Assembly: GCF_033153115.1 (NCBI RefSeq)
Contig: NW_026889803.1
Location: 32,612,001 to 32,676,000, forward strand
Length of the DNA: 64,000 nucleotides
Source of the DNA: Saccostrea echinata
Taxonomy: Eukaryota
Reading direction: 5' to 3'
Made by a program: the position numbers and the translations under genes. Positions 24,594-29,994 of the stretch are shown here, piece after piece; within the stretch, counting starts at the first letter, position 1; every line of letters begins with the position of its first letter. The notes under the pieces are model-generated. The model was not told where the DNA came from. It saw nothing but the letters and a program-made list of their open reading frames with translations, and did not search any database.

Positions 24594-25805
24594 TTATTCA
24601 TCCCTGTTGAAATTTACAGAACAAAGAAGTAGAAGTCGGGGGGGGGGGGGTCACTTTCTTTTATCTTAAGGAGGAGAAGGACCTTGAGCTGAAAAAATAC
24701 TTGTCATTCAATTTTTTTCATATTTTGTTTATTTCTAATTAAGTATGTCCCACATATCTTAAAGCAGTTATATCATTAGGTTTCTAACCTTATTTTGGAG
24801 ATATTGATTGACAAATACTATGCCCTACAGTATCTAAGTGAAGTTTTAATTCTCAATGTTTCCGGGCGCATTACTCTGTCCATAATGGGATTTTTTGAGC
24901 ATACATAAAAAATATCAAAGTGGACATGTATCTTTTAAAAAATTTCAGAGTAGCAAGTTTTGTCTATCACACTGCATCTGGATAGGGAAAATTATGCACT
25001 TTTTAAGACAACTTAAACAATAAAAAACGTAATTTACAAAAAATTCTATCATTCAATATTTTTTAATTTACGTTGAAATGCATATCCTTCAAATTATTGA
25101 TTAACTGTAAAAGTTTCGAATGATGAAGCTGACCTCATTATTTCACAGGACATCGTTAAAGAGGACATAAGCGTGACAAAAACCTTCTCGAGTACGGGAA
25201 AAAACAACTATGACGTCACACGTAAGCTAAATAAGCGAAATAAGATATACCTACATAAGATTTCCGTCATCAGCCATCCAAAAATAACTTTTGTGTTCCC
25301 CGTTTCTCAAAATATTTCATCATATACTGATTATGACCTGTTTTACATAATAATACCGCCCCTCTGTTCACCGAGTATGATCTTCTGTACTAACAGATCG
25401 TGTATGACGTCACCGACTTGTTGGACGCGCAGTTTAGAGAAACAGAGGAGTGGATCAATCTTTTTCATAATTTGTTAATGTTTACAAGAATGTTAATTTT
25501 TTTTTAATTTTTCTTATATAAGATCAGAGGCGTAGTCACAAACTTAAAAGTGGGGGGGGGGGGGGCTCAAATCCAAGAAAGATGTAAAATGTGTAATATA
25601 AAGAAATTAAGATGTAAAACATGTAATATCAAGCCCCTGTCTAAGTTGAATGAGAGGACTTCAAATAGTGCACTTAAAAGTTGATCGACATTCATCACAG
25701 GTATACCGAAATCAGAATCCAATACTTGCAGCTATCTTGTAGAAATTACTAATCTTGGTGAGATTCGGATTGGCTAGGATATATTCTAAAGTACATAGCT
25801 ATTAG

Positions 25806-28280
25806 TTAATAGTTTCCAAAGTACAGTTTCAGACTTGGAATCTTCTGGATGAATAACTTTGCTATTTCTTTGATGTTGACTTGGTCAGTTCTCTCTTTGT
25901 GAACAAAACAAGTCATACAGTGATTCAATCTTGCCTGCGTCATTGTACTTCGGAGGTAGGTTTTAATCCTCCTTAAGGACGAAAAAGATCTTTCTGCATG
26001 GTGTGGCAGTTTTGACTGGAACACTAAGATAAATTTGTACAAGCTTCGTAACTTCTGACAGAAGTTTCTTTGTGATAGGCTCCTTCATGTGTTGACAAAT
26101 TGTATCTATCAAGGTAACTTTTTTGATTTTATTTTCACTGTCAACTTTGAAAATATCAGGCAACATTTTGAGCTGCTGTTCAAGCCTCGGAAAAGAAATA
26201 TCATCTTTGTAAAGCATGGCAATTTCTTCAGACACAGAATAAAACTCTCCATTTGCTGCATTTAACAAAAGTGATTCGATTTCCTTGACAATGGTCATGT
26301 TCTTTTGTTCAAATCTGTTTTCAAGAGTACCTACAGCTTGTTCTAATGCTTCAAAGAACTGCTGTTTAAAGTAACCCTTGGTATTATCATATCTATGGGG
26401 ATTGGATCCATCATCTAATCTTTTGGGAGCACGCCTATATCTTGGCAGTGATGGTTCGTGTGTCAGGTCTTTTGTCTCTGCACAAACTGCATCATAAAAG
26501 TCAGAAAACACAGAGTCATTTCTTTGGCGCTCAAAGTAGGATACAGTGGCTTTTGATGCCCTGATAGCATCCTGTGCTGAAGTATTTTTCCCCTTGATTG
26601 AAATGGATAACTGCTCAGATGCAGCAAATATTAAGTGTGATAGCTTCAATCCAAAATATGTTGAAAACTTTTCCATCATAGCCAGTTGTCCACCTGCTCG
26701 TCTGGAGTATTCATCATTTGTATTAGTATGTATGTCATCTAAAAAGTCTTGTAGAACTTTGTAGTTCTGTATTACAGATTCTATAGCATATGTTCTAACA
26801 GTCCATCGAGTTGGACAAATTGGTCTGAGGTTTGGTGAACTAAGATTTGTTTCTTGCAATTTCTTTTGCATGAAGAGATGTTTTCTCTTTGGAGATAGAC
26901 AAATAAGTTTTTCAATTTCAGTGACCAAGTCCATTGAATCACGTATTGCGGAACATGTTTTGGTAACATCTTGAACACTAAGATTAATACAATGAGCAAG
27001 ACAGTGGACGCTTATGGCAGATGGATACTGGTTCTGGATTTGTTTTGCTACACCTGTTAAGTGTCCCGACATATTTGGCGCACCATCATATGCCTGACCC
27101 CGACATAATTCTAAGGGCAAACCACTTCTAATAAGAACATCTTTCACTGCCAAAGCTATATAGTCACTTGTTTACGAATGAATTTCAAAAAGACCTAACA
27201 TATCTTCATGAATATTGAAACTGTCATCAACCCATCTGACACATACAACTAACTGTTCTTTGTATGCAACATCCATAGTCTCGTCTGCCATAATAGAAAA
27301 CCATTTTGCCTGTCTTACATCATCAAGCACTGATCTCAAAATTTCCAGTCCAATCAGAGAAATTTGTTCATTCACAATTTCTGGAGAAATATATCTCCCT
27401 TTTTCAATCCATGACAAGATTGTTGGGTTATCTTCAGCTCGCAATTTAAGTAGCTGAATGAGGTGACCTTCAGATTCACTGTGTCCTCTGACTGCAAGTC
27501 CCTGTCGTAATAGAAATTTCAAGGAAGACAACTGACAGGAGAGTGCTAATCGTCTTTTCTTCTGGTCTTCCTTTTCCTTTTTATCTATCTGCTCATTTAC
27601 AGCCATGGCACCACTTTGCAATCGCCTAATATTTGATTCTGCTTCTTTATGAGCTGATGAATTTTCATGTGTCTTGAAACGATTAATGGCTTTTTTCCAG
27701 TTTGAAAAGCCATTTTTAGAAAAGGCCAATTCCGCATTTTTACTCAGCATCAAAAGTTTTTTCTTAGCAGCATCTCGGCAGAAAAAGCAGAAGACATTTT
27801 TTCTGGTTGTGCAAAGTGTAAGCCAAGGAAAATCATCAAACCAATTTCCTTGAACAGCTCTTGTTATGGTTTTATTCTTTCTCTTTATTGTGACTTTTGT
27901 TTGTTGAAGTGTGTCTTTATCACGTGGTTGAAATGGAGTGGGTAAAGTACAGCATATGTCTCCACAATCATCTCTGAGTGCTGTTTTTTTAGAGCAACTT
28001 TTGTCAGCCAATGATTCGATAAACTCTGCATTTTCTGTGTCAACTAAATTCTGTTTTTCTTCTTGTAATACTTCCCCTTCCATAATTTTTTGTGCACTTT
28101 CCTTGTTGCTGTTCTCTTTGGCAGAATCCTTATCGTCTATGACTTGACATTTCTTTTCTTCATACAGCGTGCTTGGTTTGTCACTCTGATTGGATTTAAT
28201 GTCCATTTTTTCTGTCTCATTATGTATGATCAAAATTGATTTTTCTTTATATGCTGTAAATGTTGATGGTTTCGTATACC
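25806..28280 (-). pseudogene. hAT transposase (ZMYM1/TTF-Zn-finger type), disrupted
   Basis: TTF finger WFDDFPWL..FCFFC..GFSNWKK..HENSSAH; catalytic ADET, YDGA, CLAH, TRW, AERSFS; in-frame TAA at 27174-27172 and a frameshift near 26000. Confidence 0.92.
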
Positions 28281-28382
28281 TTCAGTTTGTTTCTCGGATG
28301 TTTTATTCTTTTTCTGAAAGAAAGATTTCTGTTGCTTAACTTTTTTTCTTGATTTCTGTGGACTTTCTGACAGTTTTCTTTT

Positions 28383-29129
28383 TTAATGAACTGATGTTTG
28401 TTTCTTTACGAGTGGTACAAAATGATTTGGTTCAAACAGAGCACCATCACGTGTATCAAAATTGCCATCTCTAGTCCACATGATATACATAATCTCAATG
28501 TGCCTTTCATTTACTTCATTTGAACGTAGTGGGTAAAATAAATTGTTGAAAAGTGGCCTGATTCCCATATTAACCTCAGGATAAACAGAGTATATAGGGC
28601 GTTGGAGAACTGTGGCCAATGCCATGATATGTATTAAACCAGACCATGCCTTATCTGTACATGTAGAATGTGCAACATTTCTCACATTGGTTTCATTTTC
28701 ACTGCTAATCTCAGCTGTAGGAAATATCATTGCTCTGGCATCACTTAAATTCCTAGACATAAATTCTGGGTTCTTGATGACAGTTTCCAGAGCAGGATGA
28801 TCTGTGTACAATTGTCCATTGCTGAAGAGTTCGCAAGCAGTTAAAATTCGTAGACTTGTGGACAAGTGCTCATCTCCACAGAGCACAAGTGATGCACTAT
28901 TATATAAGCAATTTCCATTCCCCGTGCATTTCAGGGCTTGTTGGCCACCTTCATCTACTTTTATTTCCGATGGAATTAACACTGACGCTAATTTATCTGA
29001 TTGGAGTCTTTCATAATCAGATTGACAAGATTCATCCTGGACTCTTCGCAAATGTTTTAAACGTATGCTTACCACAGAGTCCTCATCGTTTATCTTCATT
29101 GCTGACAATAAATTGTCAAGTTCATTCAT
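28383..29129 (-). CDS. OTU-like (vertnin-type) cysteine protease domain inside the hAT element
   Basis: TGNGNCLYNSASL (Cys box), WSGLIHIMALATVLQRPIYSVYP, IMW..PNHFVPLV (His box); tttattttag acceptor just 5' of the ATG. Confidence 0.8.
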   Translation of the reverse strand: MNELDNLLSAMKINDEDSVVSIRLKHLRRVQDESCQSDYERLQSDKLASVLIPSEIKVDEGGQQALKCTGNGNCLYNSASLVLCGDEHLSTSLRILTACELFSNGQLYTDHPALETVIKNPEFMSRNLSDARAMIFPTAEISSENETNVRNVAHSTCTDKAWSGLIHIMALATVLQRPIYSVYPEVNMGIRPLFNNLFYPLRSNEVNERHIEIMYIMWTRDGNFDTRDGALFEPNHFVPLVKKQTSVH

Positions 29130-29994
29130 TGTTCTAAAATAAAATTCCAGGTGTTCAAATAAATTTAGCTTGATTTTTGTTTTAGTTACAGTAACATTAA
29201 TATTTTAATTTGTTAACTCCAGAATAGCTTGAATGAGTGGTCTTATACAACAGTTTCATCTATGACTGTATTAATTCTACATCAATTTAATCCTTTTGCT
29301 AATAACACAAAACAAAATAATCATAAAAACTTACTGATTGAAAGAGATGGTCAGACTGCAAGCATATAATCACTAATGATTGAATTAGCAAATAATTAAA
29401 AAATCCAGAGGTTTGACAAATCTTACTGCAAGGCCAATGTGTTAAACAAGAAATGAGATACAGCAAATAAATAATGGTTTTTAGATGTCAGCACAAGGGG
29501 CAGTTTGTGCTTCTCATTTAATTTTGTTAGATAACAGATGCTGACTGAAACAGAAACGTCTAAACTTAGGTCAGATTTATGGCCCGTACTCCCTATTCCA
29601 AACATGTGAACACAAGAGGTCTTGACAGATTTAATTATTATATTACATTACTATTACTAGCTTACTCAGTTGTTGCTGAAAATAAAATAAATTTGCCATA
29701 AAATGAGGTTTAATATGATTTCAACATAGCTGTGATTTTGTTCTACATTAAGTGGGGAGGGGGGGCACAGACATACTCTTGCCCCCCCCATATCTGAAAG
29801 TGTGGGGGGGCTAGTGCCCCCGCGGCCCCCCCCCCCCCACCTTGTGACTACGTCACTGAAGATGGTAATTAAAGTTAAAAAATTGTCAAAAAATTATACA
29901 AGAACTGATACTTTACACGTTTTGCACTTATATAAACGGAGACTATGACGTAGTTAAACAGAGTCATGTGACCATGTGTCCTTCATCCCCTTAA

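What the first reader, a model, noticed from the sequence alone, without database searches (positions are those of the whole stretch)
25525..29858. hAT transposon with an OTU/vertnin-like protease apparently fused N-terminally to the transposase
Seen: inside the TIRs, a 248-aa ORF with an OTU-type Cys box (GNGNCLY) and His box (PNHFVPL) lies directly upstream of the transposase on the same strand. Past its TAA (28385-28383) the same frame stays open and reads KRKLSESPQKSRKKVKQQKSFFQKK, an NLS-like/QxxxFF segment typical of transposase N-termini. One frameshift near 28280 then joins it to the TTF-finger/DDE frame. The transposase has two more lesions of the same kinds. Inference: the ancestral product was a single ~1,100-aa OTU-NLS-ZnF-hAT protein. 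Established: OTU domains occur in Helentrons and some LINEs, and Ulp1 proteases in Mutator/CACTA/Zisupton; I do not recall an OTU-hAT fusion being a standard architecture. It could protect the transposase from ubiquitin-mediated turnover or act on ubiquitylated chromatin, and may bear on the origin of vertnin-like genes.
Basis: partly seen in the sequence, partly recalled or inferred. Interest (0 to 1): 0.82.

Follow-up and report, generated by a model that had tools for sequence, protein, structure and literature searches.

The report
Decayed OTU-protease–hAT5 fusion transposon
This is a broken copy of an oyster cut-and-paste (hAT-type) transposon whose transposase originally carried an OTU cysteine protease (probable deubiquitinase) fused to its front end, an architecture that turns out to be a real, recurrent lineage in marine invertebrates and not an accident of this copy.

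Summary
Window 25525-29858 is a 4,334-bp element with 15-bp TIRs (CAGAGGCGTAGTCAC type) and a 5-bp TSD (AAGAT), which makes it hAT5-like, not a classic 8-bp hAT. On the minus strand it carries a 248-aa OTU ORF with intact Cys and His boxes. Downstream lie a basic linker, a TTF/C17orf113-type zinc finger, DUF4371, a DDE core and a hAT dimerisation domain. Four lesions break the frame: two in-frame stops and two frameshifts.

The single-ORF inference is supported:
- The other long copy in this genome lacks both junction lesions.
- Magallana gigas relatives 87-95% identical read without interruption from the OTU into the zinc finger.
- A divergent sister family in the same genome (Saccostrea echinata) has a 998-aa OTU-ZnF-DUF4371-hAT ORF inside TIRs with a 5-bp TSD.
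- Public assemblies hold intact 958-1,086-aa proteins of this architecture.

On a transposase tree the OTU-bearing forms cluster outside a large OTU-less "ZMYM1-like" clade.

The OTU models as an A20/Cezanne-like fold and is homologous to the OTU of vertebrate vertnin, which has lost the catalytic Cys. The rest of vertnin is not hAT-like. Deubiquitinase activity is inferred, not shown. I rate it a new variant of a known kind, of moderate interest.

The parts
25520..25524 (.). Target-site duplication AAGAT (left)
   Evidence: Identical 5 bp at 29859-29863. 5-bp TSDs are also seen in MITE copies L012, L013, L015 and L025 and in the L043 element.
25525..25539 (.). Terminal inverted repeat CAGAGGCGTAGTCAC (3' end in coding orientation), followed by a subterminal G-run at 25547-25566
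   Evidence: The same terminus is found on more than 20 MITE-like copies.
25806..26042 (-). C-terminal piece of the transposase: second half of the hAT dimerisation domain and the natural stop (25808-25806)
   Evidence: Pfam Dimer_Tnp_hAT E 0.0017 on this fragment. The 91-95% identical P0018/P0046 score E 1.4e-10.
25985..25997 (-). Lesion 4: frameshift inside the ...TATP|ERSFSS... block
   Evidence: TpB and TpC are in different frames. The relatives P0018/P0046 read straight through.
25963..27171 (-). Transposase core, second part (RNase H-like DDE region with YDGAPNMSG and HCLAHCINL motifs, plus the insertion domain)
   Evidence: It is homologous to P0153, P0194 and P0111 and to ZMYM1-like hAT transposases.
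27172..27174 (-). Lesion 3: in-frame stop codon
   Evidence: TpA and TpB share a frame (28233-27153 = 1080 nt). L002 reads ...EIHSQTSDFIALAVKD... across this point.
27175..28233 (-). Acidic spacer, TTF/C17orf113-type zinc finger (about 27831-27631) and DUF4371 with the first catalytic-Asp motif (MADETMD)
   Evidence: Pfam DUF4371 E 1.7e-13 and zf-C17orf113 E 5e-4. 34% identity to the L043 ORF over 358 aa, E 4e-52.
28273..28280 (-). Lesion 2: GGTATACG, two extra bases (a TA repeat) relative to L002 (GGTACG). This shifts the OTU frame out of the transposase frame.
   Evidence: M. gigas-cluster proteins read ...TEGMKPSTFTAYKEKSILIIHNETEKMDIKS... across this point.
28234..28382 (-). Basic NLS-like linker with a damaged PIP-box-like motif. 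The window reads QKSFF, whereas relatives read QKSISSFF; nine bases are missing at about 28322/28323.
28383..28385 (-). Lesion 1: TAA stop after the OTU domain
   Evidence: L002 has CAA here. P0001, P0032 and P0041 have Gln.
28386..29129 (-). OTU cysteine-protease domain (248 aa; Cys74 codon 28910-28908, His236 codon 28424-28422)
   Evidence: Pfam OTU E 1.2e-7. AF2 pLDDT 84.6 and pTM 0.87. Foldseek top hits are Cezanne, A20, VCPIP1 and TRABID OTU domains, E 6e-6, probability 1.0.
29844..29858 (.). Terminal inverted repeat (5' end in coding orientation: CAGTGACGTAGTCAC), with a subterminal C-run at 29826-29843
29859..29863 (.). Target-site duplication AAGAT (right)

Best explanation
Window 25525-29858 is a dead copy of an autonomous hAT5-type (5-bp TSD) DNA transposon of the oyster Saccostrea echinata. 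Its single gene originally encoded one protein of about 1,100 aa. In order, the domains are:

- an N-terminal OTU cysteine protease with the active-site Cys and His retained;
- a basic NLS-like linker carrying a PIP-box-like Qxx[I/L/M]xxFF motif;
- an acidic spacer;
- a TTF/C17orf113-type zinc finger;
- DUF4371 and an RNase H-like DDE catalytic core;
- a C-terminal hAT dimerisation domain.

Shown: the anatomy, the four lesions, the continuous ORF in close and distant natural relatives, the OTU fold, and the clustering of OTU-bearing transposases.

Inferred: the transposase part does ordinary hAT cut-and-paste, with the zinc finger binding the element ends, and it also mobilises the abundant roughly 0.7-kb MITE-like derivatives that share the termini. 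The OTU part most likely acts as a deubiquitinase in cis or in trans, removing ubiquitin or a ubiquitin-like modifier from the transposase or from proteins at the transposition site and so protecting them from turnover. The same role has been proposed for the biochemically active DUB domains of Helentrons (PMC9741609). I put the structural statement at about 0.9 and the DUB function at about 0.5-0.6.
For: - Ends: TIRs and the 5-bp TSD. The same termini and 5-bp TSDs occur on MITE-like copies.
- Domains: Pfam OTU, DUF4371, zf-C17orf113 and Dimer_Tnp_hAT on the pieces.
- Junction: L002 lacks the TAA and the 2-nt insertion. P0001, P0032 and P0041, in the Magallana gigas cluster at 87-95% aa identity, read OTU, linker and zinc finger in one frame. 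The internal-deletion derivatives P0017/P0018 start at the OTU ATG; P0018 runs in frame to the transposase stop.
- Sister family in the same genome, L043: a 5,096-bp element with TIR CAGTGGCGTAT, TSD CTTTC and one 998-aa ORF scoring OTU, DUF4371 and Dimer_Tnp_hAT. That ORF is broken only by a single in-frame TAG.
- Intact OTU-ZnF-DUF4371-hAT proteins: P0223 (1,015 aa, three copies), P0225 (1,055 aa, two copies), P0385/P0390 (1,086 aa), P0231 and P0282.
- Transposase tree: all 11 OTU-bearing rows fall in one 17-row set (support 97), outside a 109-row OTU-less clade (support 97). The label clusters as tightly in 0 of 500 shuffles.
- Active site: the Cys box [DN]G[ND]C[LF][FY] and the His box PNHFV are present in every OTU-hAT relative examined whose OTU domain is complete.
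- Fold: A20/Cezanne-like.
Against: - No copy of the window's own family in this genome is intact. Polarity at the junction rests on one paralogue plus relatives from another oyster genus.
- Most database proteins are automatic ORF or gene calls without taxon names.
- Catalytic activity, the substrate and any benefit to transposition are untested. The third catalytic residue was not identified.
- On the OTU-domain tree the hAT-linked OTUs are not monophyletic: starred branches force at least 2 changes. The OTU may therefore have been acquired or swapped more than once.
- Repbase and Dfam could not be consulted, so the architecture may already be catalogued there.
Confidence: 0.85

Rival explanations
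1. Two-gene element: the OTU ORF is a separate accessory gene with its own stop, and the transposase is translated independently from an internal start such as the ATG at ...EKMDIKS. The TAA would then be native.
For: In the window the OTU ORF is a clean ATG-to-TAA ORF of 248 aa. Many database relatives are stand-alone proteins of about 250 aa.
Against: The paralogue L002 and the M. gigas relatives have Gln at the stop position and a continuous frame into the zinc finger. The linker is conserved as coding sequence. Divergent families have single ORFs of 958-1,086 aa. Many short database entries are truncated members of clusters that also hold long ones.
Confidence: 0.04
2. One-off capture: this hAT family recently picked up a fragment of a host vertnin-like or OTU gene, and the fragment has no role in transposition.
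For: hATs and other DNA transposons do transduce host fragments. NCBI names the product 'vertnin-like'.
Against: The OTU is present in both long copies here and in the Magallana copies. It is also present in at least six further families whose transposases are only about 35-50% identical. The active-site motifs are conserved throughout. OTU and transposase diverge to a similar extent between the window and L043 families, 31% against 34%.
Confidence: 0.03
3. Mechanistic rival, same anatomy: the OTU is mainly a self-processing protease that cleaves the fusion protein in the linker, as the OTU-like PRO of tymoviruses does. It would release a free transposase, perhaps in addition to any DUB activity.
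For: Papain-like and OTU proteases of RNA viruses combine polyprotein processing with DUB activity (established knowledge). The long, poorly conserved linker between OTU and zinc finger would be accessible. OTU-less relatives work with a transposase that starts about 55-65 aa before the zinc finger.
Against: I saw no conserved ubiquitin-like ...GG cleavage motif in the linkers examined. The nearest structural neighbours are cellular DUBs of the A20/Cezanne type.
Confidence: 0.15
4. Domesticated host gene: the OTU-hAT ORF is an exapted 'vertnin-like'/'ZMYM1-like' gene, not a transposon.
For: RefSeq annotates parts of such loci as genes (P0032 'vertnin-like', P0222 'ZMYM1-like').
Against: TIRs and a TSD flank the ORF. 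MITE derivatives are numerous, and deletion derivatives and decayed copies exist. There are four lesions in this copy and many in L002.
Confidence: 0.02

Closest known systems
hAT5 subgroup of the hAT superfamily (5-bp TSD; first noted in Nematostella, Putnam 2007, as cited in PMC9004415)
   Same: Short TIRs, a 5-bp TSD, an RNase H-like DDE core with DUF4371, and a C-terminal hAT dimerisation domain.
   Different: An N-terminal OTU protease with a PIP-like linker is fused to the transposase. None of the texts I could search describes hAT5 or any hAT with an OTU. Placement among the Repbase hAT5 proteins could not be tested.
ZMYM1-like (TTF zinc finger + DUF4371 + hAT) transposases of invertebrates
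   Same: Same zinc finger, DUF4371, core and dimerisation domain, at 38-50% identity.
   Different: Those proteins are about 700-750 aa and start about 55-65 aa before the zinc finger, with no OTU. They form a separate 109-row clade.
Helentron (Helitron2) Rep/Hel proteins with an N-terminal OTU
   Same: They carry the same OTU sequence family, with the same Cys and His boxes, at the N-terminus of the mobility protein (P0141, P0172, P0188, P0125). OTU in Helentrons is established (PMC5148889, PMC9741609).
   Different: A rolling-circle Rep/helicase enzyme instead of a DDE transposase, with no TIRs or TSD.
Ulp1/C48 and OTU protease domains in MULE, CACTA and Zisupton elements
   Same: An accessory cysteine protease of the ubiquitin or ubiquitin-like system carried by a cut-and-paste transposon. 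This genome also has an OTU-MULE ORF (L044), and P0187 is OTU+FLYWCH+MULE.
   Different: A different transposase superfamily, and in plant MULEs the protease is usually a separate or C-terminal module. Here it is an N-terminal in-frame fusion to a hAT.
Vertebrate vertnin (VRTN)
   Same: The OTU-like domain is homologous: 29% identity over 209 aa, E 3e-23, with the His box PNHFV kept.
   Different: Vertnin has Met in place of the catalytic Cys (GEGNM) and is classed as an inactive OTU (PMC10318531). The rest of vertnin carries repeated HTH-like FKxxFPxISRSxYY motifs, which are shared with the Helentron protein P0141 and not with any hAT. It has no zinc finger, DUF4371 or hAT domain.
A20/Cezanne/TRABID/VCPIP1 cellular OTU deubiquitinases
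   Same: Best structural matches of the model (Foldseek E 6e-6 to 1e-4, probability 1.0, TM about 0.45-0.5).
   Different: 15-20% sequence identity. The specificity and the third catalytic residue are unknown.

Membership tests
hAT superfamily | C-terminal hAT dimerisation domain (PF05699) | tested here: met
   The window fragment 25809-26042 scores E 0.0017 at 18.5 bits. It is split by a frameshift and falls below the 21.4-bit cut-off. The 91-95% identical P0018 scores E 1.4e-10 at 41.2 bits.
hAT superfamily | RNase H-like DDE core with hAT-type motifs (DUF4371 region) | tested here: met
   PF14291 E 1.7e-13. The motifs MADETMD, YDGAPNMSG, HCLAHCINL and ERSFSS are read directly. Strong homology to hAT transposases.
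hAT superfamily | Short terminal inverted repeats | tested here: met
   15-bp TIR with 2 mismatches, shared with many non-autonomous copies.
hAT superfamily | 8-bp target-site duplication | tested here: not met
   The TSD is 5 bp: the window, L012, L013, L015 and L025 match exactly, L018 and L028 have 1 mismatch, and the L043 element has CTTTC. This is the known exception that defines hAT5 (PMC9004415).
hAT5 subgroup | 5-bp TSD | tested here: met
hAT5 subgroup | Transposase groups with reference hAT5 transposases (Repbase/Dfam) | not testable with these tools
   No Repbase or Dfam library was available.
OTU cysteine proteases (PF02338) | Profile match above the curated threshold | tested here: met
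   32.7 bits against a 23.3-bit cut-off, E 1.2e-7.
OTU cysteine proteases (PF02338) | Catalytic Cys box and His box | tested here: met
   GNGNC74LY and PNH236FV are present, and both boxes are kept in every TE-borne relative examined whose OTU domain is complete. The acidic third residue was not identified.
OTU cysteine proteases (PF02338) | OTU fold | tested here: met
   AF2 model pLDDT 84.6 and pTM 0.87. Among the Foldseek hits with E <= 0.001 (41 in all), every listed one is an OTU domain.
OTU cysteine proteases (PF02338) | Deubiquitinase (or Ubl-protease) activity | not testable with these tools
   This needs biochemistry. According to PMC9741609, transposon OTU domains have never been assayed.
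Vertnin (VRTN) | Homology to the vertnin OTU-like domain | tested here: met
   BLASTP E 3e-23 to fish vertnin P0184. The profile hit scores E 7e-41.
Vertnin (VRTN) | Inactive OTU (catalytic Cys lost) | tested here: not met
   The window has Cys, while vertnin has Met at that position. PMC10318531 lists vertnin as inactive.
Vertnin (VRTN) | C-terminal region with repeated HTH-like motifs | tested here: not met
   No similarity beyond the OTU between vertnin and any OTU-hAT protein.
Helentron | Rep (HUH) and PIF1-type helicase domains | tested here: not met
   Pfam finds none on the window pieces. They are present in other carriers of this OTU family.

The most novel reading that the evidence does not exclude
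OTU-hAT5 is an old, still partly intact lineage of cut-and-paste transposons in marine invertebrates (molluscs and cnidarians at least) that has not yet been described. Its N-terminal module would be an active deubiquitinase followed by a canonical PCNA-interacting PIP box (QKSISSFF, QSTVLSFF and QSTMDSFF in three divergent families). That module would tether the transposase to the replication fork and edit ubiquitin marks there, for example on PCNA, on the transposase itself or on chromatin. This would be a new way for a DDE transposon to couple to replication and escape ubiquitin-dependent control. The same transposon-borne OTU family, carried on Helentrons, would be the source of vertebrate vertnin.
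Probability: 0.2. Interest if true: 0.8.

Novelty: new variant of a known kind. Interest (0 to 1): 0.55.

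Why it matters
Accessory proteases of the ubiquitin system are known on Helentrons (OTU, VTD) and on MULE, CACTA and Zisupton elements (Ulp1). What they do for a transposon is still unknown, and no transposon OTU has been assayed (PMC9741609).

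An in-frame OTU-transposase fusion in a small, simple cut-and-paste element is a much more tractable system than a 2,000-3,000-aa Helentron protein. One could ask directly whether deubiquitination helps transposition. Natural intact ORFs of about 1,000-1,090 aa exist, and OTU-less sister transposases provide built-in controls.

It also explains two recurrent annotation artefacts in mollusc genomes: 'vertnin-like' and 'ZMYM1-like' gene models that are two halves of one transposon gene. Finally, it shows that the OTU of vertnin, a gene affecting vertebral number in livestock, belongs to a transposon-borne OTU family.

Tried and rejected
I could not read the contigs behind P0001, P0223 and the others, nor their TIRs, TSDs or taxa.
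Splicing is no longer needed to explain the junction, because relatives have a continuous ORF.
- Complex prediction of the OTU domain with this genome's ubiquitin (L047:1495-1722) returned 'no answer', score 0.00. This is no evidence for or against binding.
- Pfam alone under-detects this OTU. Precomputed annotations of the long proteins list no PF02338, so I used a family-specific profile (A2).
- I looked for similarity between the non-OTU part of vertnin and any OTU-carrying protein. phmmer found nothing even at E 10. Only a repeated short motif links vertnin to one Helentron protein.
- I considered a short GT...AG intron at 28279-28254. I rejected it because it is only 26 nt and relatives translate straight through it.
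- The literature searches found no description of an OTU-hAT fusion or of a transposon origin for vertnin. This covers only the open-access library held here.
- The search of earlier findings returned nothing.
Natural copies answered the question.

Full report
**1. What is in the sequence**

The element runs from 25525 to 29858 and codes on the minus strand. Its ends are imperfect 15-bp inverted repeats: CAGAGGCGTAGTCAC at 25525, and the reverse complement of CAGTGACGTAGTCAC at 29858. Each is followed by a G/C homopolymer run, and the element is flanked by a direct AAGAT at 25520-25524 and 29859-29863.

A whole-genome DNA search finds one other long copy (L002, contig C36, 91% identical). It also finds dozens of MITE-like derivatives that keep roughly the first 220 bp and the last 270 bp. 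Projecting the termini onto these copies gives the same ends. It also gives exact 5-bp duplications in L012 (TTAAC), L013 (CCAGT), L015 (ATGTA) and L025 (ATATT), and one-mismatch duplications in L018 and L028.

The TSD is therefore 5 bp, not the 8 bp of classic hATs. This is the signature of the hAT5 subgroup, described as 'unusual in having 5 bp TSDs' (PMC9004415).

**2. Coding anatomy and lesions**

- The 248-aa ORF at 29129-28383 scores Pfam OTU above threshold (E 1.2e-7). It has the Cys box GNGNCLY and the His box PNHFVPL.
- After the TAA (28385-28383) the frame stays open through a basic stretch ending in KSFFQKK.
- The next ORF (28233-27172) is in another frame. It carries an acidic spacer, a zf-C17orf113/TTF-type zinc finger and DUF4371.
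- An in-frame stop at 27174-27172 separates it from the 396-aa core piece, which is in the same frame.
- A frameshift at about 25985-25997 separates that piece from the last 63 residues of the hAT dimerisation domain.

From the ATG to the final stop is 3,324 nt, or about 1,100 codons.

**3. Was it one ORF?**

Three independent lines say yes.

(a) The paralogue L002 has CAA where the window has TAA. It has GGTACG where the window has GGTATACG, and those two extra bases are what puts the window's OTU frame out of register with the transposase frame. L002 carries its own lesions elsewhere, among them a 10-nt insertion.

(b) The word search returned P0001 (331 aa, 95% identical over the OTU). Its 90% cluster includes Magallana gigas XP_019918573.1 'vertnin-like' (P0032) and UniRef 'Vertnin' entries. 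P0001, P0032 and P0041 read ...PNHFVPLVKKQTSVH-Q-KRKLSES...QKSISSFFQKK...TEGMKPSTFTAYKEKSILIIHNETEKMDIKS... and, in P0041, on into the zinc finger. That is one frame from OTU to transposase. Both the paralogue and the relatives from the other genus carry the open state at each junction lesion, so the window's stop and shift are derived. The internal-deletion derivatives P0017/P0018 start at the OTU ATG; P0018 runs in frame to the transposase stop.

(c) A protein search of this genome with the OTU found a divergent homologue (31% identity) inside a long open frame on contig C9. The locus L043 holds a 5,096-bp element with TIR CAGTGGCGTAT and TSD CTTTC. It has one 998-aa ORF that scores OTU, DUF4371 and Dimer_Tnp_hAT. 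That ORF is interrupted only by a single in-frame TAG, after which 55 more codons of the dimerisation domain follow. Its transposase is 34% identical to the window's (E 4e-52).

**4. How widespread is it?**

An HMMER profile of the OTU family (alignment A2) against 1.84 billion representative proteins gave 6,722 hits at E <= 0.001. Among the long hits:

- P0153 (948 aa), P0194 (704 aa), P0066, P0111 (Mytilus edulis) and P0135 combine this OTU with the zinc finger, DUF4371 or core of the window's transposase.
- Cnidarian proteins, including Porites lobata P0010 (named 'Vertnin' by UniRef), have OTU, an FF linker and zf-C17orf113.

Searching with the L043 ORF over its whole length found 465 relatives. 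Most are 'ZMYM1-like' transposases of 700-750 aa without an OTU. P0223 (1,015 aa), P0225 (1,055 aa), P0231 (1,082 aa), P0282 (958 aa) and the cluster members P0385/P0390 (1,086 aa) carry the OTU. P0223 scores all four Pfam domains in order.

On a tree of 126 transposases, the 11 OTU-bearing rows all lie in one 17-row set (support 97). That set sits outside a 109-row OTU-less clade (support 97), and no label shuffle out of 500 clusters as tightly. Of the six rows in the set without an OTU, two (P0337 and P0224) represent clusters that also hold longer, OTU-bearing members such as P0385 and P0371; the other four (P0252, P0298, P0341, P0339) showed no OTU.

So the fusion characterises a lineage and is not peculiar to one copy. 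The tree was made with FastTree, and the window's branch is long, so its exact position is uncertain.

**5. The OTU domain**

The AlphaFold2 model, built with the 23-sequence alignment, has pLDDT 84.6 and pTM 0.87. The best Foldseek matches in the PDB are the OTU domains of Cezanne/OTUD7B, VCPIP1, A20 and TRABID (E 6e-6 to 1e-4, probability 1.0). OTUD1, OTUD3, OTUD5 and the nairovirus OTUs follow.

The Cys and His boxes are conserved in every transposon-borne member I looked at that has a complete domain, whatever the carrier. This argues for a selected, catalytically competent protease. Activity itself is not shown, and according to PMC9741609 transposon OTU domains have never been assayed.

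**6. The linker**

Directly after the OTU, three divergent OTU-hAT families carry a canonical PIP-box pattern inside a basic stretch: QKSISSFF (the window's family), QSTVLSFF (P0225) and QSTMDSFF (P0385). Other families keep at least an ...xFF motif. None of the OTU-less relatives has the pattern upstream of its zinc finger. In the window a 9-nt deletion has collapsed it to QKSFF.

It belongs to the OTU module, however, and is not a general feature of transposase N-termini in this group. PCNA binding is a hypothesis only.

**7. Other carriers of this OTU family, and vertnin**

The same OTU family sits at the N-terminus of Helentron Rep/Hel proteins (P0141, P0172, P0188, P0125). It is also found on MULE transposases (L044 in this genome, and P0187) and on a DUF7869 protein of Mytilus coruscus (P0073).

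Fish vertnin (P0184 and its cluster) matches the window's OTU at E 3e-23 with 29% identity. It has Met in place of the catalytic Cys, in line with its published classification as an inactive OTU (PMC10318531).

Beyond the OTU, vertnin shows no similarity to any hAT. Instead it shares a thrice-repeated FKxxFPxISRSxYY motif with the region that follows the OTU in the Helentron protein P0141.

On the OTU-domain tree, vertnin groups with the Helentron, MULE and L043-type OTUs and not with the window's type. The hAT-linked OTUs are not monophyletic there (weak resolution). The finding thus bears on the origin of vertnin only in that vertnin's OTU comes from this transposon-borne family. A hAT origin is not supported.

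**8. Mechanism**

Shown: the anatomy, the decay, the single-ORF ancestry, the fold and the lineage.

Inferred from established hAT biology: the zinc finger and DDE core excise and insert the element, making 5-bp TSDs, and mobilise the MITEs in trans.

Inferred by analogy with Helentron VTD deubiquitinases, which are active on K48/K63/K11 chains and are proposed to prevent proteasomal degradation of proteins needed for transposition (PMC9741609): the OTU removes ubiquitin or a ubiquitin-like modifier from the transposase or from nearby proteins. Self-processing of the fusion is a live alternative.

**9. Novelty and verdict**

The open-access library held here contains no description of an OTU-hAT fusion. 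Three things limit the novelty:

- OTU is a known accessory domain of Helentrons, and a fungal transposon survey (PMC5751038) lists OTU among the accessory domains its TE-detection filter accepts.
- Automatic annotation already calls these proteins 'vertnin-like'.
- Repbase and Dfam could not be checked.

I class it as a new variant of a known kind: a hAT5 lineage with an N-terminal OTU/PIP module.

Noticed in passing
L043:1875-6970 (G000 C9:48418874-48423969): A nearly intact element of a sister OTU-hAT5 family: 5,096 bp, TIR CAGTGGCGTAT, TSD CTTTC. It has a 998-aa ORF with OTU, zinc finger, DUF4371 and the start of the hAT dimerisation domain, then one in-frame TAG and 55 more in-frame codons. 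NCBI annotates only part of it, as a 586-aa 'zinc finger MYM-type protein 1-like [Saccostrea echinata]' (P0222). That annotation also identifies the genome. A decayed second copy is at L045.
   Followed up: yes
L044:2300-5275 (-) (G000 C27:7777799-7780774): A 991-aa ORF with an N-terminal OTU of the same family fused to a Mutator/MULE transposase (Pfam Transposase_mut, MULE). P0187 from the database is OTU+FLYWCH+MULE. This OTU family is evidently shared among several transposon superfamilies.
   Followed up: partly
P0184 (fish vertnin) versus P0141 (2,005-aa Helentron protein): Vertnin's OTU has Met for the catalytic Cys. After the OTU, vertnin and the Helentron protein each carry three copies of an FKxxFPxISRSxYY HTH-like motif, which none of the other OTU carriers checked has. 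This suggests that vertnin is a domesticated Helentron N-terminus. I found no paper saying so.
   Followed up: partly
window 28300-28345 (-); P0001 267-274, P0225 266-273, P0385 263-270: A canonical PIP-box pattern Qxx[ILM]xxFF within a basic stretch lies just after the OTU in three divergent OTU-hAT families. OTU-less relatives lack it, and a 9-nt deletion has destroyed it in the window.
   Followed up: partly
window 25525-29858 versus P0032/P0041/P0046 (Magallana gigas): This dead Saccostrea copy is 87-95% identical at the protein level to Magallana gigas copies. That is about as close as it is to its own paralogue L002 (91% nt). This looks too similar for vertical descent of neutral DNA between two oyster genera, so horizontal transfer is possible. 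I had no nucleotide data to test it.
   Followed up: partly
window 17966-21316 (-): An uninterrupted 1,116-aa ORF of a non-LTR retrotransposon (endonuclease and reverse transcriptase) lies 4 kb from the element.
   Followed up: no
P0383/P0384 (NCBI MCS5550442.1 and MCS5550443.1, 'MAG: Gammaproteobacteria bacterium', 4,963-bp contig): These proteins sit in the same 90% cluster as the 1,086-aa eukaryotic OTU-hAT proteins P0385/P0390. The contig is almost certainly an animal transposon mis-binned into a bacterial MAG.
   Followed up: no
G000, many loci (e.g. L009, L012, L013, L015, L025): An abundant MITE-like family of about 0.7 kb shares about 220 bp of the 5' end and about 270 bp of the 3' end of this element. 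These copies have 5-bp TSDs, and some sit in tandem or nested arrays (for example C1:25076584-25077712).
   Followed up: partly
OTU-domain tree: The hAT-linked OTUs fall into two parts of the OTU tree. The window/P0225/P0385/cnidarian type is in one part. The L043/P0223 type groups with the Helentron, MULE and vertnin OTUs. On the transposase tree, by contrast, all of them are neighbours. This hints at replacement or repeated acquisition of the OTU, but resolution is weak.
   Followed up: partly
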